Source: Chrysemys picta bellii (taxonomy: Eukaryota). From it: a DNA stretch of 64,000 nucleotides. Every line of letters starts with the position of its first letter. The stretch's first letter is position 1. The stretch lies in the NCBI RefSeq assembly GCF_011386835.1, contig NC_088791.1, forward strand, positions 153,450,001 through 153,514,000. Direction: 5' to 3'. Below, piece after piece: positions 1 through 64,000 of this stretch. The position numbers were made by a program, and so were the translations under genes. The notes beneath the pieces were generated by a model. That model had not been told where the DNA came from. It made no database searches and worked only from the letters and a program-made list of their open reading frames with translations.

Positions 1-1714
1 AAATTGAGCGGGTAACAAAATAGATGTATATAATATATGGATGCTGGTATTTGCCTTCTTTTAAACTGTCATCCCAAAACTTACCAATGGTATCTGACAT
101 CCTAAAATTACATTTTTTCCTTGATAGATCAAATAGCAATACAACAGTCGTTAGAGAGACACTTTGGATGGGTGGAATAGAAAATTCAAGCCGTTAATGT
201 AAGATGTTTGTATCCTGGCAAGCTCCTCCTCTTTTGCAAGTGCATCCACAATGGATGTAGGTCCAGATTGTGTCTCATGGGCACTACTCCATATTGGTGG
301 TGGTGTAATGTGGACCTGAATCACACCAGAGGGAACTCCAGGGAACATTGTGGAGTTCCTGAGCTTGTGGGGGGGGGGGGGGAAGGGAGCTTCTGTCCAT
401 GGCTAGCGAGCTCTGGCCAATCTCATCTTTATGGTGAGCACAAGGACTGCAATTGTCAGCCCCACCTGAGTGGGAGTGAAGGGAAGTCACCTTGAGCCCT
501 TGCCATCCTTGTCCACCCTTAAAAGTAGTAATTTTAGCTCCTTCGCTATATCTTTGGATTAAATTCTTTCTAGTTTAGCTTTTTAGGTATCTGTATAAAA
601 ATGATAAACACATCAAAACTTGTCACATGGCTATAGTTTTGTCTCAGGGTTCTGGTGACATCATAAACCTCTGAAATATCACTACTGATATTATACCTAC
701 AGCACCCTCAATGGAATAAAAAGCCTGGTTATGCAATATGTACGTGCTTACATTTTATCAGTGATTAGCACCCTCATTGCATTTCCACCTTGCTCTTAAA
801 TATTTGCCCTCCACTTAGTGTTAGTACAGAAGTTTTAGGTCAGGAGTGTTCAAAAAAATCAAATTGGCTGCTATTTCTTTATACCCACACAACTGAAGGT
901 TACCGGTTTTAAAATGCTTTTTTGTTGCTCATGAAATTCAAAAACAGCTTTGATTTCAAACATGAAACTTGGCAAGTGACTGGTCCATAATGTGTTCTAA
1001 TCACTTCTGGTATTTTGGAAAAGACTTGAAAATGACGGAGTTATTATTTTATTTAGAAATCTAGCCACCATGCATAGACCTTAATTTTTCTCGCCCTGCC
1101 ATGATAAAATTCAGACAGATTTTTAGCATATGGCTTTGTTGTCCCTGCCCCGGCATTCACACTAATATGACAAATCTTAACTTTGCATTTTCTTGCTTTT
1201 CATAGTTCTTGCTTGTCACAACTTTAATATTATTTAAAAATGCTAGGCTGGTTCTATCTCTGTGGTTTCATTGATCACCAGGGATGAATTTGATTATTTC
1301 TGTTTTCTTTAAATTAGGGCTGTCAAGCAATTAAAAAAATTAATTGTGATTGATCACGCGATTAAAAAAATTAATCGTGATTAATCGTGCGATTAATCAC
1401 ACTGTTAAACAATAATAGAATACCATGTATTTAAATATTTTTGGATATTTTCTACTTTAAAATATATTGATTTCAATTACAACACAGAACACAAAGTGTA
1501 CAGTGCTCACTTTATAATTATTTTTATTACAAATATTTGCACTGTAAAAAGCAAAAGAAATAGTATATTTCAATTCACCTAATACAAGTACTGTAGTGCA
1601 ATCTCTTTATAATGAAAGTTGAACTTACAAATGTAGAATTATGTACAAAAAATAACTACATTAAAAAATAAAACAATGTAAAACTTTAGAACCTGAAAGT
1701 CCACTCAGTCCTAC

Positions 1715-2268
1715 TTCAGCCAATCACTCAGACAAACAAGTTTGGTTACAATTTGCAGGAGATAATGCTGCTCATGTCTTGTTTACAATGTCACCTGAAA
1801 GTGAGAACACGCTTTCGCATGGCACTGTTGTAGCCGGCATCACAAGATATTTATGTGCCAGATGCGCTAAAGGTTCATATGTCCCTTCATGTTTCAACCA
1901 CCATTTCAGAAGACATGCGTCCATGCTGATGACAGGTTCTGCTCAGTAACGATCCAAAGCAGAGTGGACCGACGCATGTTCATTTTCATCATCTGAGTCA
2001 GATGCCACCAACAGAAGGTTGATTTTCTTTTTTTATGGTTCGGGTTCTGTAGTTTCCGCATCAGAGTGTTGCTCTTTTAAGACATCTGAAAGCATGCTCC
2101 ACACTTTGTCCCTCGCAGATTTTGGAAGGCACTTCAGATTCTTAAACCTTGGGTCAAGTGCTGTATCTATCCTTAGAAATCTCACATTGTTACCTTCTTT
2201 GCGTTTTGTCAAATTTGCAGTGTAAGTGTTCTTAAAACGAACTTGTGCTGGGTCATCATCCGAGACTG
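1715..2268 (-). pseudogene. hAT transposase C-terminal remnant (RNase H end plus dimerisation domain), with stop codons
   Basis: Manual minus-strand translation gives ...TALDPRFKNLKCLPKS...KWWLKHEGTYEPLAHLAHKYLVMPATTVPCESVFSLSGDIV, matching the hAT LDPRFK and WW...LA..YL..PATS..SER.FS motifs. Internal stops are present. Confidence 0.9.
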
Positions 2269-17333: not shown

Positions 17334-18724
17334 CATGAGAACGTAAGAATGGCTATCCTAGGTCAGACCAGTAGACCATCTAGCCCAGAATCCTGTCTTC
17401 TGATAGTGGCCAGTGCCAGATGCTTCAGAGGAATGAACAGAATAGAGTAATTTTAGAATCATCCATCCCCTGTCCTCCAGTCCCAGCTTCTGGCAGTTGG
17501 AGGTTTAGGGACACCCAGAGCATGGGATTGCATCCCTGACCATCTTGACTAATAGCCACTGATAGATGACATTATCCAATTCTTTTTTTTTTACCCCAGT
17601 TTTACTTCTGGCCTTCACAACATCATCTGGCAATGAGTTCCATAGGTTAACTGTACGTTAGGTAAAGAAGTACTTCTTAATGTTTGTTTTAAACCTGCTG
17701 CCTATTAATTTAATTGGGTGACCCCTGGCTCTTGTGTTATGTGAAGGGATAAATAACACTTCCCTTTTCCTTTCTCTACCCCATTCATGACTTTAGTATA
17801 GTCCTCTGTTGTATCCCCCCCTTAGTCATCTCTTTTCCAGAAGTTCTGCAAACTTTGCCATTACATTAGCTATGCTTCAATCATCAGGTACAGAGGCTGA
17901 TTTATGCGATAGGTTACATACCACAATTAGTATTTCTGCAATTTCATATTTGAGTCCTTCAGAACTCTTGGGTGAATACCGTGTGGTCCTGGTGACTTCT
18001 TATTGTCACCTAACAATATTCTCCCTCACATCCTCTGCAGTAAAGTCTGATGCAAATAATTCATTGAACTTCTCCGCAATAGCCTTGTCTTCCTTGAGTG
18101 CACCTTTAGCACCTTGATTGGCCAGTGTCCCATTGATTGTTTGGCAGGTTCCTGCTTCTGATGTACTTTAAAACAATTTTGCTGTTATTTTTTGAGTCCT
18201 TTGCTACTTGCTTTTCAAATTCTTTTGTGGCCTGCCTAATTATACTTGACTTTTCAGAGTTTATGCTCCTTTCTGTTTTCATTAGTAGGATTTGACTTCC
18301 AATTTTCAAATGATGTCTTTTTGCCTCTATCTGCCTCTTTTACTTTGTTGTTTATCCATGGTGGCGTTTTTTGGTCCTCTGACTGTTTTTTAAAATTTGG
18401 TTTATACATTTAGTTTGAGCCTCTATTATGGGGTTTCTAAATGGTTTCCATGCACCTTGGAGGTATTTCACTCTTGTGACTTTTCCCTTTAATTTCCATT
18501 TAACTAGCTTCCCCTCTTCTGTGTAGTTGAAGGTATCTATCTCCCCCACTACAAGGATATTAAATTACATTACATTATGGTTGCTATTACTTAGCCATTC
18601 AGCTATAGTCCCCTCTTGGACCAGATCCTGTGCTCTACTTAGGACTAAATCAAGAATTGCCTCTCCCCTTGTGGGTGCCAGGACTAGCTGCTCTAAAAAG
18701 CAGTTGTTAACGGTGTCTAGAAAA
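17334..18724 (-). mobile_element. CR1 LINE, 5'-truncated, with an internal deletion of the RT core
   Basis: Tail CATGAGAACGTAAGAA (inverted TTCTTATG repeat) at 17334. The 3' ORF2 end LEKR.LRGD (17800-17840) is joined to the PDD..IANV / PGP.GIHPRVLK region (17851 onward). Endonuclease end FLDTVNNCFLEQLV.APTRGEAILDLVL at about 18600-18722. Confidence 0.92.
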
Positions 18725-19797: not shown

Positions 19798-20035
19798 ACT
19801 ANNNNNNNNNNNNNNNNNNNNNNNNNNNNNNNNNNNNNNNNNNNNNNNNNNNNNNNNNNNNNNNNNNNNNNNNNNNNNNNNNNNNNNNNNNNNNNNNNNN
19901 NNNNNNNNNNNNNNNNNNNNNNNNNNNNNNNNNNNNNNNNNNNNNNNNNNNNNNNNNNNNNNNNNNNNNNNNNNNNNNNNNNNNNNGAAATCACTGCACC
20001 TTAAAAACAAAAAGATTAAGCTGCACTGCATTCCT
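19798..20035 (+). other. Candidate exon (or two exons) spanning an assembly gap
   Basis: Acceptor TTTTTTCCCCCCTCTTTCTTCATTACAG ends at 19797, four bases before the gap. Consensus donor CT|GTAAGT at 20036, 49 bases after the gap. Confidence 0.4.
19802..19986. other. Assembly gap (185 N)
   Basis: Run of N. Confidence 1.
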
Positions 20036-21794: not shown

Positions 21795-21925
21795 AGAGAA
21801 CCTTAATATCTCCATTTTACTGATGGGGAAACAGAGATACAAAGGTTAAATGACTTGCTCCAGGTCACACAGCGAATCAGACCTAGAGTTGGGAATAGGA
21901 CACAGGATCCTGACTCAGCACAATT
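21795..21925 (-). mobile_element. MIR-like SINE
   Basis: CCATTTTACTGATGGGGAAACAGAG...AAATGACTTGCTCCAGGTCACACAG...GGAATAGGACACAGG. Confidence 0.7.
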
Positions 21926-37795: not shown

Positions 37796-38456
37796 ATGAA
37801 GAAACACTTATGATGCTCCCACCTCCAGTAATGAGCTCTCTTCTCCCTATCTTTCTTCCTAGAATTTACAAGCATCTTTTTCATAGTCATTTTTTATTTA
37901 TTAAGGGGGAGGTTTTCAAAAGGGATTTGTCCTCCTCAAGCCTTTAGGTCTTTATAAAAATCCCAGCCTAAGAGTTATCAGTGTGCTTGTCCTTGTGTAA
38001 AAGCCAGAGAGTGATACACTCCAAATCCAGATAATGGTGAGCACCCTGACCCTACACTACTGCTATGTCCTGCCATACCAGACATGCCATGTGGATGACA
38101 GAAGTCTGCCTAAGTACAGTCTTCTACTTAGCACACAGAAATGTAGGGCTAGCCCTGGTGAGTGTACTATACAACTAAAAAAAAAAAAAATCCTGGAGTC
38201 TGATTATAATTCAGATAAATTCCCCAGCACTCTCTGCACTGAACCTCTTGTAGTGTCACAGAGCAGAATGTAAAATGTCTGAGAATGGTTCTTCAAAACA
38301 ACAGCAACGCCACAGTGCGATCAGGCACTAAACATGTAAAAACAACAGCAAAGAAACAAAACTGGGACCAAGCATCTGAAACCAGGGACAGTGTCATGAA
38401 AACCCAGCCAGTGGTGTGTTTCTACTATGAAAGGAAAGGGGGGTAGTTACTTATGA

Positions 38457-38596
38457 NNNNNNNNNNNNNNNNNNNNNNNNNNNNNNNNNNNNNNNNNNNN
38501 NNNNNNNNNNNNNNNNNNNNNNNNNNNNNNNNNNNNNNNNNNNNNNNNNNNNNNNNNNNNNNNNNNNNNNNNNNNNNNNNNNNNNNNNNNNNNNNN
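38457..38596. other. Assembly gap (140 N)
   Basis: Run of N. Confidence 1.
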
Positions 38597-38670
38597 CACA
38601 CTCCAGCAGTTGATAGCAGGTACCTGCTCAGAAGGGAGGAGGGGGGAACGAAGCTGGAAGGTTGTTTTTT

Positions 38671-38722
38671 AGTGAGAGTGAGAGAGAGAGAGAGTGTGCG
38701 TGTGTGTGTGTATGTGTGTGTG
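38671..38722. repeat. Compound (GA)n(GT)n microsatellite
   Basis: AGTGAGAGTGAGAGAGAGAGAGAGTGTGCGTGTGTGTGTGTATGTGTGTGTG. Confidence 0.9.
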
Positions 38723-41709
38723 AACAAAGGCTTTTAATAAGTGTCAGTTGTGAGCATCTTTTAAAGTAATTAATGCACCCACACAAAAATTGTTAAAATG
38801 AAATTTTAAGGAATTGTCTCAAATGAATTAATTAACAACAAAAAATCACTGCAGAACATTGTGTCTTTTTGTATTAAATAAAGGAGTAAAGACTAACAGG
38901 AGGGGATCCTGTGATATGGCATTTTAAGATGTTCTTGCTGTAAAAACTTAAGGTACATAGACAGGCTGCCAGAAACCAAATACAAACAAGGATACAAATG
39001 TGGGAGCAGATCCTCCCTCAGCCTGTGTGGGATGCAGAGGGGCTTTGAGCGGCATATCAGGTATTGGACAATCTCCTGCAAAGGGGACTAATCCATCTGC
39101 ATCCTGCAAAGTTCTCTGCAGAACAGTGATGTTTGCTCATCATATTCACCCCAGTTTTGTCCATAGGGGCAAAAGCGTTTGAATGACCAGGGAGGGGTCT
39201 CCTTAAGCAGGTCATGTACCCCTCAAACTCTGCATATATATAAACACCTGAGTGCACAGGAATCATTTCTCATATAACTAGTTACTTCTCCATTGTGGGT
39301 GTAACTAAAGGTCAAGTGGCAGTGACCAGGATGCAGAGTACGGATGCCAGGTGCTCAGGGGTCTATCTTTCCCTTTCTCCATCTGCACATTTCCCTTAGT
39401 TTCAACACATGCAGAATCCACCCCATTTTGAGGGCATAAATCTAGCAATAAATACAAAGCACGCCTGGCTTTTTGCATTGCTGATTTGCTTGTATGTCCT
39501 GGATCTGCTCATTCTTTTTGAAATTTCCAGACAAAAGTCCTGGTTAAAGTGTAGTCTACTCAGAAACTGAGCTTTGGCATTGTTTGTCTCTCAGTGACTC
39601 CCAAACAAACGTGCTCACTTTATACATATAAAGAGGCTCTGTCTAACTGCCAGTGCCAGCAACTTGCCTTAGCATCTGGAGGTGTCAAGCTGGGTTCTTG
39701 CCTACTTAATAGCCATCACCAAGAAACCTAGCTCAACTGAGTGTAGTGCAGGAGCAATTGAGGAGATGTAATAAGACTACTGGAGATGTTGCTCAAGAGG
39801 GAATGAACCCAGCATGATTACAATCTGGTTTAGATATAGGTCTAAAACCTGCCCCCAAGGACATGTAGGATCTGATAGGTGGAGTAATTCCACTGCACAC
39901 TCAGGTAGGTTATAGAGCCTTTAGAAGGTGAGTTATGTGGATACTTCTACAGTCCCTGTGTTGCAGTAGTGGGGATAGAGTTGATGTGTGGGTGCTAAGA
40001 GGCCTTAGAGAGAGAATTCCATCGTCCCCCTCTTGGTCTCCCCTCCAATTTCCCTTTAATCAGAGACTAAGAGGATTTTGCTCATAGACACTACAGTTTT
40101 GTACCCATAATAGAATGAGAGAATGGTTCTCACTTGAAGCAAAGCAGATAACTTAGGTTGTGGTCTCTGCCAGAATGTGGAGGCTGAGATCATACTAAAG
40201 CTTTGTGAGCTCCATTTGGTGCCTTTTACTTCCGTCTTGTTTCTCTCTCTGCAGGGGATGTGAAACTAGATTTGTCCTGTTTCCACAGCAGGGTTTTGGT
40301 TTATTTTGTTTTTCCATAGCATTTCATTCCATGGCCCAACTCCAGATGAGAGTGTACTGCAGAGACAGATTTGAATGTCAGCTAGAAAATGTCTTGGGTA
40401 TGATACACCCTTCATTGTTGTAAATTATGGTAGCTAGAAAATTACGGTACATTTTCAATGCATCAATACAATCGCTAAATTATCATGTTGACTATTTATC
40501 CCTTAGCATAAAGCAAAACTATATCAGACAGGTTTGCTGAAGGATGTTTAGTGGTGTAAGCTTCAAGATTGAAACTCCTTGATTCTGTGTAGTCCAGGGC
40601 CAAATTCCAACAGCCATTCATCTCTTTATACCTCTGTGAAAGGTAAATTGAAGTTCATGCAATTTATTTTAATGGTTTTCCAGATGAGTCCTTAAAACTG
40701 AGGTCCGGTTAGGTCAGGATCATCATATAAAAGAGACTGGGGCAGTTTGGGAAGAGGAGGAGTCGGCTTTGCTGTATGCAGCCACAACTTTCCCCTTCCC
40801 TACTGTTGTGCAGTATGCTGTGCTCCATTCATCTCTCAGCTTGATGTTTTATCACAGAGGTGGTTGCATTTCTGGTAGTTCTGGGTGTATGTATAGCACA
40901 TTGGGCTCTTTCAGAATGAAAGGTCCTGTTTAAGTATAATATATTGTTTTAAGTTTACAATCTAATGTGGGCTATTGACCATATAGCTCTCATTAAATGT
41001 ACAGTCATGGCATTTACTCATCTGCTTCCCTCACCAACTTCTTTCTGAGTGTATCGTAGGCAGCACAGCTTACATATTTGTGTTGATCTCATTCCCAAGT
41101 GATTTGTCGGCATGGTGTGTTATGAAATACAAGGTCAATAACAGGCCAAGCATTTGACAGCATGGTATTGTGTTGTACACTAGGAAAGGAGAGCTCAAGA
41201 GTAGCTAGGCAAATCCCAGGTCTTTCGATGTGCCTTGAAAGCAGTGCAGTCAGCCTTCAGGAGTTGGAGCATGGTGAGGTTCCTGAGTTGCTCTCTGTCA
41301 TTCATAGCAGGACAGAGTATGGTTCTGACAGAGGCAGAGTGCCCACAATGCTTATTAAAGTCAGAGAATTAAAGGACTGGTTTCTTGGCATCATTTACAT
41401 TCAACGCCTGTCCTCTTCTAGCACTGTCCAGTAACACAGAGCCAAACAATATATATTGGCATATTAAAGCCTTTCCAAAGCATGAACTTGAGAAGGTAGG
41501 GCATAAAAGCATCATTCTTCATTGGCCTTTCTTTCCCTTGGTAGCTATGAGCTACTCCAGCTATACTCCATTATAGTCCCATAATGTTTTCCCCCAATCC
41601 GCCACACTTTTCTAGTAACAAAAAACAAAACAAACAACAACAACAACAACAAAATAAATAAAAGTTGAGTGAGCCAGAAGGGGGGCACTGCTCTAAAGAA
41701 ATCACCGCC

Positions 41710-41835
41710 AGTGGAATTTTTACAAACACTCAGCGTTGGTCTAGCTCTGCTCCGATTGAAGTCAATAGGAGTTTTACCATTACGTCAGTGGAGCAAAGTT
41801 AGGCCAACGCTGAGTGCTTTTGACAATCCGATCCC
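41710..41835. mobile_element. Short palindromic MITE-like relic, same family as 62875-63000
   Basis: CACTCAGCGTTGG...CCAACGCTGAGTG inverted arms around an ATTGAAGTCAATAGGAG core. Confidence 0.6.
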
Positions 41836-42174
41836 TCTTTTATAAATTTGGCTATTACAACTGCACCTTCCCTTTAATACATATTTCTCTGGGTCTGACT
41901 CTGGGGTGGGGAGATTCCTCCTCTAAATATCAGGTAAATGTTCTCTATTTTTACTGTTTGTCTTCAGCACAATCAAATGCAAGCTTCTGCCTCTCCTTGC
42001 ATCCCATTTAGACTTAAACCAACACAAACACATTGGCTTTTCTAAAGATTGTTTCCACCCTGTTGCTCTTTCATCTGACCCTTCTTCTGTCTGTAGGAGA
42101 ACTAACTTAACCTGTCTGGAAAGCTAACACCTTAATTTTCAGAGAAGGGAGGTAATGATGACTAAATAAGATAA

Positions 42175-42245
42175 GGGTCAAATCTTAGTCCCATTGAAAT
42201 AAATGGCTGAGCTCCAATTGATGTCACTGGGACTCAGATTTGGCC
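42175..42245. mobile_element. 71-bp palindromic MITE with TAA/TTA flanks
   Basis: GGGTCAAATCTTAGTCCCA ... TGGGACTCAGATTTGGCC inverted arms. TAA at 42172-42174 and TTA at 42246-42248. Confidence 0.7.
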
Positions 42246-42248
42246 TTA

Positions 42249-42332
42249 AGGTCTCTTTCAATCCTAATCTTCTATGATTCTATGATTATCAAATCTACTG
42301 CACTGAACAAACATCCCAGTGCATCCAAGAAC
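42249..42332 (+). repeat. Exact inverted copy of 36207-36290 (39 bp CR1 tail plus 45 bp unique flank)
   Basis: Base-by-base comparison gives 84/84 identity to the reverse complement of 36207-36290. Identity stops at both ends. Confidence 0.97.
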
Positions 42333-48479: not shown

Positions 48480-49253
48480 TATGGCAAATTGCCGGCACTA
48501 TTATGAGGGGTCCCGCGCTTTCTCCTCTTGTGGGAGTTCAGGGCACCATTTCTCATCCCTGAACTGGGGTATCAACTGTCCCACTAGTGTCCCAGAAAAG
48601 GGGAGTGGAGAGGGAGGGACCCAGGCCTGCCCTCTACTCTGGGTCCCAGCCCAGGGGCCCTAGGGATAGCAGCGAACCACTTGAACTAGCAATTCCTTCC
48701 CCTGGGCTACTTCCCTCTCTGGCCCTTCAGCTTGTGGGGCTACCTGCCCTCTCTCCGCTTGGGCCAAGTTTCTCCCAACTCCTTGTGTCTGTAGAGTCCC
48801 TCTGCTCTGCGCAAGCCGGGTTTCCCTTTACCTAGGGTCTTGGTCTTCTGGCCCGCCACAGCACTTCTTCAAACTGCTCTCCTCCAAACTGCTCTCTGCT
48901 CCAACACCAAACCACTCCGCTTCAACTCCTTCAAACTGCTTTCCTCCAAACTGCTCTCCACTCCTACCCCAAACCACTCTGCTTCAACCCCTTCAAACTG
49001 TTTTCCTCCAAACTGCTCTCTGCTCCAACACCAAACCACTCTGCTTCAACTCCTTCAACTGTCTAATTGAAGCAGGGGGGTTTATCAGGTGACTGGTTTC
49101 AGGTGCTCTAATTGGCTTAATTGGTTTCAGGTGCTCTAATTAATCTGTAACAGCCTCTCTTCCCTCTACAGGGAATAAGGCTCTCCTCATCCTGGGGCTT
49201 ACATATCTCCCATCGATCACTCTCCTGCTGCCCTCTGGCCATGCTATATCACA
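48480..49253 (-). mobile_element. Solo LTR (Gypsy or ERV1 type), 774 bp
   Basis: On the minus strand it begins TGTGATATAGC and ends GCCATA (decayed CA). 4-bp TSD TTAC at 48476-48479 and 49254-49257. No internal sequence. Confidence 0.85.
48867..49060. repeat. 62-bp tandem repeat, about 3.1 copies, inside the LTR
   Basis: Units start at 48867, 48929 and 48991 (CTTCAAACTG...CCTCCAAACTGCTCTC...CCAAACCACTC.GCTTCAAC). Confidence 0.92.
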
Positions 49254-54694: not shown

Positions 54695-54890
54695 AGATGA
54701 GTATGTGGCTAAAGAACAGCACTGAGGCAGGACATCGGGTTTGAATACTGTCTCTGTCATTGATTTGCTGTGTAATCTTGGGCAAGGCATTTCACCTTTG
54801 TGCTTGTTTCCCCATTTGCAAAAGCAGGGTAATAGCTGAGGAGTAACTAATTAATGCTGCTTCACTACTTTGTGAACTTTGGATTGCAGG
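54695..54890 (+). mobile_element. MIR-like SINE
   Basis: GTGGCTAAAGAACAGCACTG...CTTGGGCAAGGCATTTCACC...TTTCCCCATTTGCAAAA. Confidence 0.6.
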
Positions 54891-55689: not shown

Positions 55690-55855
55690 TGAGGATGTCA
55701 ACGCACTTCAGAAAGATGTGTAGGTATTATTACCCCCATTTTATAGATGGAAAAGTGAAGTCCACAGAGATGGAGTGACTTATGCAAGGCCACACAGTGA
55801 CTCAATGGCATGGCTAAAAATAGAACCCAGGTATCCTGGCTCTTAATCCTCTACT
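55690..55855 (-). mobile_element. MIR-like SINE
   Basis: CCCCATTTTATAGATGG...AGTGACTTATGCAAGGCCACACAG...AATAGAACCCAGG. Confidence 0.7.
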
Positions 55856-57047: not shown

Positions 57048-59309
57048 TAAAGCAGCAGTTTGTACAAAATGACCCAGGGAGACCCTTTGGCCTGGAATGT
57101 AAAGGAGGTTTCAGTACTGTGGAAGCAGCAGTGAGCAACACTAGCGAAAGCAAAGGAAGAGTTCAGTTAGTTTTATTAGCAAAATACTGTAAAAACTGAA
57201 CTGAGAAACTTGCAAAAATTTCAAGGACTTTTCCTGATTTGCCTTCTCTCTGTGACAGAATGGGAACTACTGTCAGGTGACTCCAGTTTTGACAGCCCTT
57301 TGAGATGACATGTGAAAAGTACATAGACTTTAGCCTGTGATACAGTGTCTTTTCATGAAGTGATTTGCCCCTACCATGCTGCTTTAGTATGGTTGTTTTT
57401 TCACCACACCTGTTCACATAGTCTCACTTGTCCCTGATCTGATATGATCTCAGAGAAATGCAAAGAAGAATAGAAAGCATGTGGGACAAAACAGGTATTA
57501 CCAACGGGGCCAAATTACCCATGGCAGTTTGTCAGCCCTCAAGAAAAGATGGAGGAAAAGGGAATTAGCTTCATGAGCTGCTGTGATGTCAGGGAGGTAC
57601 TGTATGGCAGACTTACCTTTGATTTTAGTGTTGTCAGTAGGACAAACTGTGGCGTAGGGAAGCTTCTTATTGTTATAGTATTTGTTGTATATACATAAAT
57701 GATAGGTGGTGGTGAAATGAAGTGCAAAGGAATTGATTCAGCCCTTTTCTGTTAGTGCCCTAAACCTCTAGACTCTGATGGCCTAAATTTTGGCCTAACT
57801 TGCACACTCTCTGACTTTAGTGGAGGAGAATTTAGCCCAGGTAACTGGGGTTTTGGTTGTTTTCTTCTTCATATTTGCCCAGTTTATTTTGTGTAATGCA
57901 TCTTTTCCGCAACCTTATTTTCTGCTGTTTTATGTCTGATGCTTTGAATCCCACCACCCATGCCACTGGTCTTGGCATTTTCCTTCCTCCTCTAAGGAAG
58001 GGAGCAAAGAAGGAGGATGGATTTTACTTGAGAGGAAGAGTGAGGTGCTGGTTCCCGGGGAAATAAAATATGCCCGAGGGGCCTCGTTGGGAGGAAATAT
58101 TGTTCTGTTGTGGTGTGGTGAAAAAATATTGGCCGGGAGACTTTGCGCTAGTCATTCCAGTCCTAATTCCAGCTCCTACTGCTTCCCATCCACAGAATTT
58201 CTACTCCTGGTACTGCCTGTAATACTATAGGAAAACCCCATCCAAATTCTTGATCAGAACTTTGGAACATATGAAGGAGACTCCACCCCCAAAAATCCTG
58301 TTTTATATAAGACCCAGCCTGCTGTATGTTGGGGCAGGACTGTGAAGTCTGACTAGATAACGATAATAGTTCTTTCTGGCCTTAAAATCTATGAATCTAG
58401 TCACTTCTTCATAGATCCGTAATGTGGATGTGTTCAATGGAGCTGATAGCTAGTTACTTTAATTCAGACTATTAGTGCATTCATTCAAGAACCTCTCAGT
58501 AAACAGAGGATCAGTCTCCTTTCCCTCCCCCTTCCACAGGACCTCTACTTCTTGTGGCTTTGACTCCGATCCCATGTGCTCCAAAAGTACTTCTCCTCAT
58601 GGCTTCTTTCTTGGCACTTTCCTTACCTCCCCTGCTTCTGAGGCCTCCCCAACCTTATTGCTGTTTTTCAATCTACCAGCTCCCTGCCAGCAGAGAAGTT
58701 TCACAGTGCACACCCGCAGCACTCACTGTTAATTTTTCTTTTTGATGTTAACCTGGTGTTGGTATAGTGCTCCTTTTCAAATTTTAAAAAAAAAAATTGA
58801 AGGCATCTCTTGGAAAGACTCAGTAAAAATCCCTAAAGGAGCAGCAGTCATACTTATTGCTACATTTTAAATTCCAGCCCTGTTTCATGCATGTCTGTTT
58901 GCCTCAGCTTTCCATCCCCTCCATATTTTTTTTCACATTCAGAAATCTTACATTCCTGAGGAGTTTTCATTCCTCCCAATTAAGCTTTTTAAATAAAAAA
59001 TAAAAGTTAAAAGCAACTGCCACGTAGGATTAGCACTAAGTGAGCTGCTGCCGGCAGGTAGTTCCCATCTAGTGTAAATGGCTCTGTACTTCTGCAGCAC
59101 TAAACAGTGCAGTTCACACTTGTGAATTGCGGGGGCTGGTGATGACAAACACATGACTTCTAATAAGTAGATGACAGAGCTATGTTGGTGTCTCAGACCT
59201 ATGAGTTGCTGAAATCAAATAATGCCTCACTTTTGAATTCCAGTGCCATTGTGCCCATGAAGTACTGTAGGGAGGAAGTGTTGTCTAATTGTTAGAAACG
59301 GGAACTGGC

Positions 59310-59475
59310 AATAAAGCACATGGATCCTCTTCTTGGCTCTGCTCTAGACTCTGGGTGACCTTGGGCAAACCAATTCGTGACTTTGGGCCTCAGTTTCTCC
59401 ATCTGTGAAAGGGGATAACAAGAAATCCCTATTTCACAGGGCTGTTGGGAGACTTCAGTAAGTGTGAAGCACTCT
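59310..59475 (+). mobile_element. MIR-like SINE
   Basis: GGGTGACCTTGGGCAA...GGGCCTCAGTTTCTCCATCTGTGAAAGGGGATAA. Confidence 0.7.
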
Positions 59476-60165
59476 GTTGTTCTTACATTTGCGGGTTGCA
59501 CCTTTTATCTGAGAATTTCAAAGTGCTTCATAAACAATTGATGAAGTGTCGCAGTACCAATGTGCGTTGGGGAAATGTTATCGTCCCCTGTACAGATGGT
59601 GAAAGGGATGTGTAGAGATATTATGTGATACTTTGTATTTTAACAGTTAATACACAGGACAAAGCAAAGTATTATAACAGGGATGGGCAGCATTATGGGA
59701 ATTTGGAGGTGGTTTTTAGTACCTTTTGACTAAATCCCAAAATTCAAGAGGGTCAAGAAGCTTAAATAAATGGTTCTTTCTTACCTATCTCTGCTTTAGA
59801 ACATTGTTGTGACAGATATTTCTTTAGAGCTTTTTAAAAGAGCTCAGCACCCATTGTATCCCATTGTGAAACACGTTGAGCTGTTTCAAAAATCTGAAGG
59901 TGTCTAGAGCACTTTACAAAATCTGGCCCTTAATGCTTGCGTCTTTACCAGTGGTACTGTCACTAATAACCTGCCCTTGGCTGGGGGCTTGGCCTGCTTT
60001 GCAGAGATGAAGAAATGGCAGGCAGCTGGGAGAGGCTAGGAGAATCAATAAAGGCAAAGAACTCTGGCTATCATAGGGGAAACCTGAAAAGCCCAATTCC
60101 TTCATTCTGAGCATATTCTGAGCATTCCAGCAAGAGGTGTTGAAAAATCGGCCAACTCAGACTAG

Positions 60166-60697
60166 AACTTAAGAACAGCCAGGCTGGTTCAGACCAATGG
60201 CCCATCTAGCCCAGTATTCTGTCTTCCTACAGTGGCCAGTGCCTGAAGTTTCAGAGGGAATGAACAGAAGAAGGCAATCTTTGAGTTATCCATTCCCTGT
60301 CACCTAGTCCCAGCTTTTGGGAGATGGAGGTTTAGGGAAACCTGGAGCATGGGATTGTGTCCCTGGCCATCTTGTCTAATAGACATTGATGGACATATCC
60401 TTCATGCACTTATCTAATTCTTTTTTGAACCCTGTTATACTTTTGGCCTTCACAATATCCCATGGCGACAAATTCCACAGGTTAACTATATGTTGTATAA
60501 AAAAGTTCTTGTTTATGTTTGTTTTTAAACCTGCTGACTATTAATTTAATCGGATGACCTCTTGTTCTTGTGTTGTTCTTGTGAAGGGGTAAATAACACT
60601 TCCCTATTCACCTTCTCCTCACTATTCATGACTTTATAGCTCTCTATCATATCCCCTCTTAGTTGTATCTTTTTCTAAGCTGAACAGACCCCATCTT
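60166..60697 (-). mobile_element. CR1 LINE 3' portion, same subfamily as 17334-17840
   Basis: Inverted TTCTTA tail (AACTTAAGAA), 3' UTR CCAATGGCCCATCTAGCCCAG...GGAATGAACAGAA, ORF2 end on the minus strand (FSLEKDTTKRGYDRE, equivalent to FSLEKRRLRGDM). Confidence 0.92.
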
Positions 60698-60722
60698 TGC
60701 ACAGTGTCCAGATGGGTATGTC

Positions 60723-62427
60723 TGTAAATAATTAATAGTAAAATGGAGTAAAACAGGAAAGAAAGATTTAGTACTGAAATGTCAAGTGTGTACCAGAAGC
60801 CAAGAACTTGTGGAGGAGGGACTATGTGGGAGGGGAGTTGAAGTCTGCTTTTCACTGGCTAGCCCCTGACCCTGACATGAGACTGATGTCTGACTATAAC
60901 CCCTTTGAGTCTAACGGCCAGTAAGAACACTGCATTGATAAGGGCTTCAGTTGTCTTTTTATAGGTATCTGTTTTCCTAGGGCACTCCTATCGATATAGG
61001 CTTATTTCTAGAATTCAGGAAACCCAAGCTCCCAGTTCAGTTACGTATTTAAGTGCATACCTAATTTGAAGCATGCAAATAGATTTAAATGCAACTAGTT
61101 GTGTGTTTAAAGTTTGGCATATGCTTAAGTATCTACCTGAACCAGATCACTAATCAAGATTCTCTAGTATGGAGCTAGTCGGGAGGTAGTAAAAATACTG
61201 TTATCACATTCCCCAGGTTCATGCCCATTCACCCTGCTGAAACATTGCTCGCAAAAAAACATGTTCTGCAAATTTCTTACTTCTGTTTTCATGCCCCTGA
61301 GATGCTTGTGTTTTGTGAAAATGTTATCATGTGGTTTCCCAGACATTCAAAAATGGGGGAAATTATTTCGCTTAAAAGTAAATGAAAATGTTGCAAAACT
61401 TTTGTAAAAGTCAGAGCAATTTCAAATTTGCAATAAGAATTCTGAATATTGTTGTGGATATTTTGCACAGCTTTAACTAAGAACCTCTTCACATACATTA
61501 TTCTTTATATCTGTTTTTAATAATATTCAAAAACTTGGCAAGGCAGTATCCAGTCCTGTGAATGGGAGTATACTATGGTCATAGTAGGAAACTGACATGG
61601 AATGGCAAACTGTGGTTGTGAGATGAGAGGAAGATACTGTGCTAAATTCTGCCATCATTTACATCTCTGGATAGTCAATGTGGTTGCCCAGGGCATAAGT
61701 CAAGATAAAATTTGGTTCATTGTGTTGAATTACAAGGCTCATATCCAATTATAATTAATTTTGGATTAGATATAGTGCATACAGCAGCATGGTACCGTAG
61801 TCTGATGTATCAAATAAAGTGATTAAATGGAAGGATAAATTCTCTTTGCTTTCACATCAACAATAATATTGTCACTTTTCATATGGAGATCTCTAAGTGC
61901 CTGTAAACAATAATATATTACAACATCTCTTAATGCTTCTGTGTTATGGATAATTATCTCCAGTTTACAGGTGGAGAAAATGGGGCACAGAGAAATGAAA
62001 TGACTTGCTTAAGGCCACACAGCAAGTCAATGGCAGATGTGGGAATAGAATCCATAAGCCCTGACCCCTAGTCCTGGGCTTTAAGCAGAAGATCAATAGC
62101 ATCAGTAGTGTGCACATCAATTCAGGCTGATTTCAGCTTGTGCAGAATATGCTTCCCCTCCACTGGCCCCTCGGAAAACAGATACCTATAAAAAGACAAC
62201 TGAAGCCCTTATCAATGCAGTGTTCTTACTGGCCCTTAGACTCAAAGGGGTTATAGTCAGACATCAGTCTCATGTCAGGGTGAGGGGCTGGCCAGTGAAA
62301 AGCAGACTTCAACTCCCCTCCCACATAGCCCCTCCTCCCCAAGTTCTTGGCTTCTGGTACACACTTGACATTTCAGTACTAAATCTTTCTTTCCTGTTCT
62401 ACTCCATTTTACTATTAATTATTTACA
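60723..62427. repeat. 255-bp inverted repeat (60723-60977 vs 62173-62427) with a 1195-bp spacer
   Basis: Manual alignment shows 6 substitutions in 255 bp and no indels. The ORF track shows the same peptide on opposite strands (60634-60855 minus and 62220-62543 plus). Confidence 0.96.
61870..62090 (-). mobile_element. MIR-like SINE
   Basis: CCAGTTTACAGGTGGAGAAAATGGGGCACAGAGAAATGAAATGACTTGCTTAAGGCCACACAGCAAG...GGGAATAGAA. Confidence 0.7.
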
Positions 62428-62874
62428 ACACCATCATTGTTGTAAGATCCTGTCTTCCAATCATTGATTCTGTACATAAACACCGGCTCAGTAGGCAGCT
62501 CTGCCTTTTTAATTCTGTAGCAGTTTATAGTCTGAACACATAGCAAATAATATCTTTTAAGCTGTGTTTAACTCCTGTTATTGGCAGACTGTAATTATAT
62601 AGATCTCTATATAGCAGTATACATTGAATATTTAACTGCAATATGTATGGGAAGCCCTTCCCCCTTGAGATTTCTTTACCCATGCATATCAATATAGGCA
62701 CGGTATCTAAGTGCCATTGCAATGAAACCAAGTACATTATGGAAGAAGAACAAAAGAGAGACTTCAGCTGAGGAGAAATGAAAATACTTGGAGGAGAGCA
62801 AAGTGAGGAGAGAGGACTTGTGTGACAGGTATATACTGGCACAAAATATTAATATTTGATTTCTGCAATATCTT

Positions 62875-63000
62875 TAGGGTGGGCTTTTCAAAAGCTCTCA
62901 ACACTGGCCTAATTTTGCTCCCATGGAAATAAATGGGAGTTTTGCCATTGATTTCAGTGGGATAAGAGTTAGGCCAATGCTGAGTACTTCTGAAAATCCC
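62875..63000. mobile_element. Short palindromic MITE-like relic
   Basis: GGGCTTTTCAAAAGCTCTCAACACTGGCCTAA...TTAGGCCAATGCTGAGTACTTCTGAAAATCCC inverted arms. Similar to 41710-41835. Confidence 0.6.
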
Positions 63001-63384
63001 ATCCTTAAATAGGATAAGGTTGGCCCATATGAGAACTAAATAAACCCACCTCATCCCTTACATTATTTTTTTTTAGAGACACAGATAAGTAGAGGGCTGT
63101 GGCTTACTTCACATACAGAGAGAGCTGTGGCATCCCACCTCATTGTCTTGCTTTCCAAATTACTGCCTCCTCAGTTAATTCTGCTGAGCTATAGGAAGCC
63201 ATTCATCAGTACAGCCAAAAGGCTAGGCCGCTGGTCTTTTTAACTCCATGAAGTTGTCAAATCTCTGAGCCAAGGACTTTTCTCGTTGAGCTTGTCCGTG
63301 AAGCGCCATGCACGAGTATCATGCAGTATAAATAACAGGAGATTATTAACTATATAAGGTTCTTCATGGGGTGGGGGGGGGAAC

Positions 63385-63605
63385 ACTGTGTAGTATTTAG
63401 AGCTGCAGAATGACAGTGTGGATTGTGGGGTTAATTCCCAGCCCTTCCACTGATTTATGGTATAACCTTATGCAAGTCAGCTAACCACTCTCTGTGTCTA
63501 TTTCTTTATCTGCAAAAAGGTGTAATAATGTTACTGTAATAATAATAATTAATCATTAATAAATGTTGGTAAAGTGCTTTGAAACCCTGGATAAAAGTTG
63601 CTAGA
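63385..63605 (+). mobile_element. MIR-like SINE
   Basis: GTGTAGTATTTAGAGC...TTATGCAAGTCAGCTAACCACTCTCTGTG...GTAAAGTGCTTTGAAA. Confidence 0.6.
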
Positions 63606-64000
63606 TATACATGCAAAGTTTTGTCATCAGGCCAAATCCTAGGCCCAGTTTATATAGGAGCATTAGCCCAAGTCTGGCATGTAATCTGATTTAGCATCAG
63701 ATAGGTCCTAAAGATGGTTAGTCTAGTGTATAAAAAGGATGGAAGGGATTCATCTCTGCTGTGTGCACAGGGCTACCCATGGAACTCAGGATCTAATGCA
63801 AATGAGCTCCCTCCTCTGCCGAGTAGCCGTACATCAATCCTGGTTCTGTTTCTTCCCCACATTCTGGCTGCAAAGGCTGCTCCAGCCCTTGATAGCAATA
63901 AAAGACCCTGTGTATCTTCTGGAGGGAGGAAGGCAGAAATGGTTGGTGGTCACTCAGTGTGTTTTGGTTTTGAAGGGGCATGGGAAGAGGTCAGCAAGGG

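What the first reader, a model, noticed from the sequence alone, without database searches (positions are those of the whole stretch)
60162..62427. CR1 whose 5' junction captured an inverted 255-bp copy of DNA lying 1.2 kb downstream
Seen: a minus-strand CR1 (60166-60697) is followed by about 25 bp of filler, then an inverted copy (60723-60977, 249/255 identical) of unique sequence at 62173-62427. The composite is bracketed by CTAG at 60162-60165 and 60977-60980. Inference: during integration the nascent cDNA end switched template to, or was repaired from, nearby chromosomal DNA, so the whole unit is one insertion with a 4-bp TSD. This left a long inverted repeat able to form a stem-loop or dsRNA (an ADAR substrate if transcribed).
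Basis: partly seen in the sequence, partly recalled or inferred. Interest (0 to 1): 0.7.

Follow-up and report, generated by a model that had tools for sequence, protein, structure and literature searches.

The report
Old CR1 beside later inverted duplication
A 255-base stretch of unique turtle DNA was copied backwards into a site 1.2 kb away, right next to a much older, decayed CR1 fragment; it looks like an ordinary scar of DNA break repair or replication, not part of the CR1's own insertion.

Summary
A minus-strand CR1 3' fragment (about 60161-60697) and 24-25 orphan bases lie to the left.

The repeat is real and not new. In contigs of a second, about 1.1% diverged species, the assembly breaks fall exactly at the repeat borders, and a k=31 simulation gives that pattern only if both arms are present. 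The arms are single-copy, so they are not transposon ends.

The one-event reading is not supported:
- The CR1 is about nine times more diverged (JC 0.22 to its only relative in the window, seven in-frame stops) than the arms (JC 0.024).
- The left CTAG lies in the CR1's own octamer tail.
- The right CTAG lies in a 6-nt imperfect microhomology (CTAGGG/CGAGGG).
- A shared 4-mer is expected by chance.

Best reading (about 0.65): a resected break end folded back, primed at that microhomology, copied about 254 nt, and was joined to the other end beside or inside the old CR1. Which arm is the copy, and the empty site, could not be tested; no outgroup was distant enough. The scan has noted several similar inverted templated patches elsewhere in this genome. 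A weak hint of A-to-G editing over arm 2 remains unverified.

The parts
60161..60697 (-). Old, 5'-truncated CR1 3' fragment. It is a neighbour of the event, not part of it in my reading. Its tail ends in two octamer-like units, GTTCTTAA and GTTCTAGT on the minus strand; the second unit holds the left CTAG.
   Evidence: 77-81% identity to the only other copy at 17338-17836. The ORF2 C-terminal frame has seven stops. Family depth is 1e5 or more in contigs of another species, and a single-copy orthologous contig covers 60198-60394 with 2 differences. No ORF2 continuation is seen beyond the arms.
60698..60722 (.). Junction filler of unknown origin between the CR1 homology and arm 1.
   Evidence: No other match in the window with up to 3 mismatches. 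Alignment to the second CR1 copy ends before it.
60723..60976 (+). Arm 1: inverted copy of 62174-62427. I favour this arm as the copy, about 70:30.
   Evidence: 249/255 over 60723-60977, no indels. In organism D a 255-nt contig equals 60723-60977, as a k=31 graph predicts for a two-copy inverted repeat.
60977..60982 (.). Imperfect 6-nt microhomology, CTAGGG, against CGAGGG (the reverse complement of 62168-62173). Proposed priming site of the foldback. It contains the right CTAG.
   Evidence: The mismatch at 60978 is shared by organism D, where the contig breaks at 60977/60978.
60983..62167 (.). Spacer or loop, mostly unique sequence. It carries a MIR-like SINE core at about 61940-62090.
   Evidence: One contig in organism D covers 60948-62202 with 11 substitutions and 4 gap letters.
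62168..62173 (.). Partner of the microhomology (CCCTCG on the + strand).
62174..62427 (+). Arm 2: the probable source copy, single-copy sequence.
   Evidence: Contig depth in organism D over the arms is at most about 55, against 32-35 in the flanks and 1e5 in the CR1.

Best explanation
A DNA-level, foldback-primed templated insertion, also called a template-switch scar. It happened long after an unrelated CR1 had inserted and decayed at this site.

Proposed steps (inferred, not shown):
1. A break or stalled 3' end arose at about 60976/60977.
2. The 3'-ended strand was exposed for at least 1.45 kb and folded back on itself.
3. It paired through the imperfect 6-nt microhomology (60977-60982 with 62168-62173).
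4. It was extended for about 254 nt, copying 62174-62427.
5. The new strand was released and joined to the other end at 60722 with about 24 nt of filler. Ancestral sequence was probably lost in the process, including the more 5' part of the CR1. That loss would explain why the arm abuts the CR1's truncation point.

The mirror-image direction, with arm 2 as the copy, uses the same microhomology and is not excluded; I rate it at about 30% within this explanation.

Shown here: the repeat, its borders, its single-copy nature, its presence in a second species, and the age gap to the CR1.
For: - Gap-free inverted repeat of 253/260 made of unique sequence.
- Arms are at single-copy depth while the CR1 bins reach 1e5.
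- Organism D contigs 60723-60977, 60948-62202 and 62398-62952 are exactly the unitigs expected only if both arms exist. The repeat therefore predates a split that corresponds to about 1.1% divergence (25 differences in 2258 nt of listed pieces). This fits an arm divergence of 2.4%.
- The arm contig in D has depth 49 against 32-35 in the flanks. That fits arms that also differ at about four sites in D, so recent homogenisation is not indicated (inference).
- The CR1 is about nine times older by divergence. Its private differences are supported by family depth at 19 sites, and the second copy carries the majority letter at 12 of 17 comparable sites.
- Imperfect microhomology at the inner junction, and a filler junction at the outer one. 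This is the architecture described for foldback inverted insertions at double-strand breaks (PMC11724301).
- Several other inverted templated patches were noted in this genome, one of them in this window.
Against: - No outgroup with an empty site was obtained, so neither the order of events nor the direction of copying has been observed.
- The arm starts within 25 nt of the CR1's 5' truncation point. Under an independent event this needs either coincidence (a few percent) or a deletion that removed the rest of the CR1.
- The copy (254 nt) and the loop (1.19 kb) are larger than most events in the yeast model (mostly under 34 bp, up to about 150 bp, 41-nt loop).
- Arm divergence gives only a minimum age if the arms were ever homogenised by gene conversion.
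- The CR1 divergence was measured against one other copy and against family majority letters, not against a curated subfamily consensus.
Confidence: 0.65

Rival explanations
1. One reading: one composite CR1 retrotransposition. Target-primed reverse transcription extended the + strand from 60165. The reciprocal end of the endonuclease-made break was resected, folded back and copied 62174-62427. It was then joined to the truncated cDNA end through the filler.
For: - Arm 1 starts 25 nt from the CR1's 5' truncation point, and no CR1 sequence continues beyond either arm.
- Experimental L1 insertions sometimes carry inverted or locally templated genomic DNA at the reciprocal end (PMC11702581).
- CR1 has been active recently in the painted turtle (PMC4316615).
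Against: - The CR1 is about nine times more diverged than the arms and has seven in-frame stops. A copy as young as the arms should have about 0.4 stops (my estimate).
- The CTAG pair is not a credible target-site duplication. The left one lies in the CR1's octamer tail, the right one in the microhomology, and a shared 4-mer is expected by chance.
- There is no sign that the arms were kept alike by conversion in organism D.
Confidence: 0.1
2. The same DNA-level foldback event in the opposite direction. Arm 1 is ancestral, and arm 2 (62174-62427) is the copy, inserted at a break at 62173/62428.
For: The microhomology and the geometry are symmetric. No repeat or other landmark spans either arm border that could mark the original.
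Against: The end of the copied tract would then lie 25 nt from the CR1 5' end purely by chance. Orphan filler is seen at arm 1's outer border. This is weak evidence only.
Confidence: 0.2
3. The segment 60723-62427 is a DNA transposon with 255-nt terminal inverted repeats that inserted next to, or into, the CR1.
For: Long terminal inverted repeats bracket a 1.2-kb interior.
Against: - The arms are single-copy in whole-genome contigs of another species (depth at most 55 against 1e5 for the CR1) and unique in the window.
- There is no direct repeat flanking the ends (GGTATGTC against ACACCATC).
- There is no ORF of 90 aa or more in the interior.
- The CR1 does not resume after 62427.
Confidence: 0.02
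4. An assembly artefact, such as a chimeric or palindromic read.
For: Inverted duplications can be produced by library artefacts.
Against: - The arms differ at 6-7 sites.
- The same structure, with the same borders, is in contigs of a different species and study.
Confidence: 0.01

Closest known systems
Foldback-primed templated inverted insertions at double-strand breaks (yeast Break-Ins study, PMC11724301)
   Same: One resected end folds back on imperfect inverted microhomology and is extended. [quoted passage not shown] The product is a longer inverted repeat with the former loop as spacer.
   Different: Here the copy is about 254 nt and the loop 1.19 kb, against mostly 5-34 bp (up to about 150 bp) and a 41-nt loop. 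This is a fixed germline event in a vertebrate, and no genetics is available.
Short-range template-switch mutations in great ape genomes (PMC7954356; abstract only)
   Same: A local switch of the polymerase to a nearby template yields an inverted copy and hairpin-forming sequence.
   Different: Those events are described as small-scale. This one is longer and longer-range, and a break-repair route fits it equally well.
L1 insertions with inverted or locally templated genomic DNA at the reciprocal break end (PMC11702581)
   Same: A retroelement fragment directly abuts an inverted copy of nearby chromosomal DNA.
   Different: There the two parts arise together and carry hallmarks of target-primed reverse transcription. 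Here the CR1 is about nine times older than the copy and the target-site duplication is not credible.
L1 twin priming (5' inversion) (PMC2837659; abstract only)
   Same: The second 3' end at the target primes synthesis, giving an inverted segment at the 5' side of a LINE.
   Different: In twin priming the inverted segment is LINE sequence copied from the RNA. Here it is unique chromosomal DNA.

Membership tests
CR1 LINE (identity of 60161-60697) | Octamer microsatellite at the 3' terminus | tested here: met
   The minus strand ends in GTTCTTAA then GTTCTAGT, two degenerate 8-nt units. The second copy shows the same tail. The feature is described in PMC4316615.
CR1 LINE (identity of 60161-60697) | Conserved 3' UTR hairpin | tested here: inconclusive
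   A hairpin is predicted in the last 60 nt, but its energy is no better than shuffles (z -0.06). The copy is decayed.
CR1 LINE (identity of 60161-60697) | ORF2 C-terminal coding remnant upstream of the 3' UTR | tested here: inconclusive
   Both copies read in one frame with similar peptides. From memory these resemble the CR1 ORF2 C-terminus. Pfam, the Atlas and the word search gave nothing.
CR1 LINE (identity of 60161-60697) | High-copy, interspersed, 5'-truncated | tested here: met
   Contig depth is 1e5 or more over 60126-60730 in four runs. No continuation is seen 5' of 60697.
Composite LINE insertion with captured local DNA | A target-site duplication brackets the whole composite | tested here: not met
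   Only a 4-mer is shared, which is expected by chance. It lies inside the CR1 tail on the left and inside the arm or microhomology on the right.
Composite LINE insertion with captured local DNA | LINE part and captured part are of equal age | tested here: not met
   JC 0.22 (CR1 against the other copy) versus 0.024 (arm against arm). Seven in-frame stops.
Composite LINE insertion with captured local DNA | The empty site in an outgroup lacks both parts | not testable with these tools
   The three other species laid (organisms D, F, G) are only about 1-2% diverged, and D already has the repeat.
Foldback / template-switch inverted insertion | Inverted copy of nearby single-copy sequence on the same chromosome | tested here: met
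Foldback / template-switch inverted insertion | Microhomology at the priming junction | tested here: met
   5 of 6 nt: 60977-60982 against the reverse complement of 62168-62173. Such a short match is weak evidence on its own.
Foldback / template-switch inverted insertion | The ancestral state lacks one arm | not testable with these tools
   No sufficiently distant outgroup was obtained.
TIR DNA transposon | Family of copies with the same ends, plus target-site duplications | tested here: not met
   The arms are single-copy, unique in the window, and have no flanking direct repeat.

The most novel reading that the evidence does not exclude
The CR1 fragment, the filler and the inverted copy arose in one CR1 retrotransposition. 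In that event the reciprocal end of the endonuclease-made break folded back and copied downstream DNA. The arms were then kept alike by gene conversion, or the CR1 came from an already decayed source. This would be the first natural, fixed CR1 example of the target-site inverted duplications seen in experimental L1 systems.
Probability: 0.1. Interest if true: 0.45.

Novelty: new member of a known kind. Interest (0 to 1): 0.25.

Why it matters
On its own it matters little. It is a neutral-looking structural scar, fixed before two related turtle species split.

Its value is as a clean, sequence-resolved germline example of a long (about 254 nt) and long-range (1.2 kb) foldback-templated insertion. 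It adds to several similar scars noted in this slowly evolving genome. A systematic count with outgroups could measure how common this mutation class is, and whether it clusters at particular repeats.

It also creates a 255-260-bp near-perfect inverted repeat. If transcribed, this would be a textbook ADAR substrate, and one probable RNA run gives an unverified hint of clustered A-to-G changes over arm 2.

Tried and rejected
- Continuation of the CR1 to the right of arm 1 or arm 2: three-frame translations show no ORF2-like sequence. An insertion into the middle of an intact CR1 is therefore not shown.
- Source of the 24-nt filler: none in the window.
- More CR1 copies for a divergence estimate: only one in the window.
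- Tool-based naming of the ORF2 remnant: Pfam gave 0 families, the Atlas no usable hit, and the word search no candidates for a 44-aa piece. None of these searches could see full-length ORF2 proteins.
- Rfam over 58000-64000: only sub-threshold miRNA-family matches to a palindromic repeat outside the feature.
- Coding context: no Pfam hit for ten long ORFs in the window, so the gene context is unknown.
- Outgroup empty site: the runs laid turned out to be close relatives.
The N runs at 19802-19986 and 38457-38596 were left untouched.

Full report
**1. Observation**

- The repeat finder reports one strong inverted pair: 60723-60982 and 62168-62427, 260 nt, 97% complementary, 1185 nt apart.
- A pairwise alignment shows 7 mismatches and no indels. 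The seventh is at 60978, followed by four more matches.
- blastn of each arm against the 64-kb window finds only the other arm.
- CTAG is present at 60162-60165 and at 60977-60980.

**2. The element on the left**

- The stretch 60164-60673 matches one other place in the window (17338-17836) at 77% by blastn, or 81% over aligned columns with a JC distance of 0.22.
- On the minus strand both copies read in one frame with similar peptides. The focal copy has seven in-frame stops in about 105 codons.
- From my own knowledge these peptides resemble the C-terminus of CR1 ORF2. No tool could name them: Pfam found 0 families, the Atlas gave no usable hit, and the word search found no candidates for such short pieces.
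- The minus strand ends in two octamer-like units, GTTCTTAA and GTTCTAGT. This fits the CR1 3' octamer microsatellite described in PMC4316615.
- Contigs of four public runs pile up to depths of 1e5 or more over 60126-60730, so this is a high-copy interspersed repeat.
- I accept the CR1 label. The homology ends at about 60697. No ORF2-like sequence resumes to the right of arm 1 or of arm 2.

**3. Is the repeat real, and how old is it?**

The look-up of sequencing runs listed holders from seven coded organisms. I laid one whole-genome-sized contig set of organism D and three small, probably RNA, sets.

In organism D the listed contigs are:
- 60723-60977: 255 nt, 2 differences, depth 49.
- 60948-62202: 11 substitutions and 4 gap letters.
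- 62398-62952: 10 differences.

A k=31 unitig simulation on the window gives exactly these boundaries when both arms are present and alike. It gives a single unbroken contig when arm 1 is removed. Organism D, about 1.1% diverged (25 differences in 2258 nt of listed pieces), therefore has the same inverted repeat with the same borders. This rules out an assembly artefact and places the event before that split.

The depth of 49 for the arm contig, against 32-35 for its flanks, is what a two-copy segment with about four popped single-base bubbles would give. I infer that the arms also differ in D and were not recently homogenised.

A single-copy contig of D (60198-60394, 2 differences, depth 30) shows that the CR1 is orthologous there too. 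Depth over the arms is at most about 55, against 1e5 in the CR1, so the arms are not a repeat family.

**4. Test of the one-event model: age**

- The arms differ by 2.4% (JC 0.024). The CR1 differs from its only relative here by JC 0.22, about nine times more.
- At 19 sites at least about 76% (mostly over 90%) of the family depth carries a letter other than the focal one. The second copy carries the majority letter at 12 of 17 comparable sites. These are therefore mostly private changes of the focal copy.
- Seven stops in 105 codons are far more than the roughly 0.4 expected at arm-like divergence (my Poisson estimate).
- The CR1 was thus long dead when the arms were identical. The alternatives are that the arms were homogenised for a long time, or that the CR1 was copied from a decayed source.

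**5. Test of the one-event model: target-site duplication**

- The left CTAG (60162-60165) lies inside the second octamer-like unit of the CR1's own tail. The alignment to the second copy still matches there.
- The right CTAG (60977-60980) lies inside the homology between the arms.
- A shared 4-mer between two 8-nt windows occurs in 10% of random pairs. Between windows of about 21 nt it occurs in 70%.
- The bracket is therefore not evidence for a single insertion.

**6. What the junctions suggest**

At the inner end, 60977-60982 (CTAGGG) faces the reverse complement of 62168-62173 (CGAGGG), a 5-of-6 match. The mismatch at 60978 is shared by organism D, because the contig breaks at 60977/60978. 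It may therefore be original rather than a later substitution.

This is what a foldback-primed event would leave:
- After a break near 60976/60977 the right-hand end is resected.
- Its 3'-ended minus strand folds back on itself and pairs through this microhomology 1.19 kb away.
- It is extended along 62174-62427.
- The product is unwound and joined to the left end at 60722 with about 24 nt of filler, for which I found no source.

This hybrid of microhomology-primed synthesis at one end and end-joining capture at the other has been shown genetically for inverted insertions at yeast breaks (PMC11724301). There the sizes were smaller.

The geometry is symmetric, so arm 2 could equally be the copy. 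I lean to arm 1 because orphan filler sits at its outer border. A deletion reaching into the CR1 would also explain why the arm abuts the CR1's truncation point.

Three of the seven mismatches are transitions and four are transversions. That is unusual for neutral decay and could mean that some arose during error-prone copying. The numbers are too small to say.

**7. The rival that remains**

L1 insertions in an experimental system sometimes carry inversions or locally templated DNA at the reciprocal break end (PMC11702581). CR1 has been active recently in the painted turtle (PMC4316615). A composite CR1 event is therefore mechanistically possible, and it would explain the adjacency for free.

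I weighed the adjacency (favouring it about 10:1) against the age gap (disfavouring it about 20:1) and a lower prior. That leaves it at about 0.1. Only an outgroup with an empty site can settle the matter, and none of the laid species is distant enough.

**8. Double-stranded RNA and editing**

- The arms could pair over 260 bp (duplex energy -484 kcal/mol as RNA).
- Three small runs that the tool guesses to be RNA hold low-depth contigs across parts of the stretch. The tool warns that this does not show transcription.
- One contig of the run with the window's species label (X17, 62336-62486, depth 2.3) has 7 differences in 151 nt. That run's tally shows 11 A>G places, against 4-5 in two other runs, while all other change classes sit at the shared CR1 baseline.
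- This is compatible with A-to-I hyper-editing of a + strand transcript over arm 2. The positions were not listed and I could not lay reads again. I report it only as a lead.

**9. Context in this scan**

Earlier notes on this genome describe several inverted templated patches.
- One lies in this same window at 36207-42332. Its follow-up also concluded that it was a repair or replication scar rather than a CR1 jump (s1-320937).
- A first-reader note proposes a recurrent pattern at CR1 ends (s1-321022).

I did not test those. They are unchecked notes, and I did not raise my confidence because of them. They fit a general DNA-level process in a genome that is rich in CR1.

**10. Verdict**

The single-insertion reading is not supported, although the idea of a templated copy from nearby DNA is. 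The feature is a new member of a known kind of mutation scar, of modest interest.

Noticed in passing
window 62895-62986 (second copy 41717-41834): Palindromic high-copy repeat. It scores below gathering for mir-1677, mir-1784 and mir-1803 on both strands and has depth of about 4e4 in organism D contigs. It looks like a hairpin-forming MITE-type repeat rather than a miRNA gene.
   Followed up: partly
window 62336-62486: A contig of a probable RNA run with the window's species label has 7 differences in 151 nt over the outer part of arm 2. The run-level tallies show about 7 excess A>G places. This may be A-to-I hyper-editing, but the positions were not shown.
   Followed up: partly
window 1700-1932 and 2382-2619: A second inverted pair, about 240 nt at 82% and 449 nt apart. 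It has no other copy in the window. It could be an older inverted duplication of the same kind, or two copies of a sparse repeat.
   Followed up: partly
window 61940-62090: A MIR-like SINE core inside the spacer, with weak copies at 21807-21898, 55717-55810 and 54753-54794.
   Followed up: no
window 48867-49058: A tandem repeat of a 62-nt unit, three copies at 90-96%.
   Followed up: no
window 60935 (organism F contig end): The spacer contig of organism F runs 13 nt further into arm 1 (to 60935) than the k=31 graph predicts for alike arms (60948). This would fit an extra arm-to-arm difference at 60965 in that species, and hence presence of both arms there too.
   Followed up: partly
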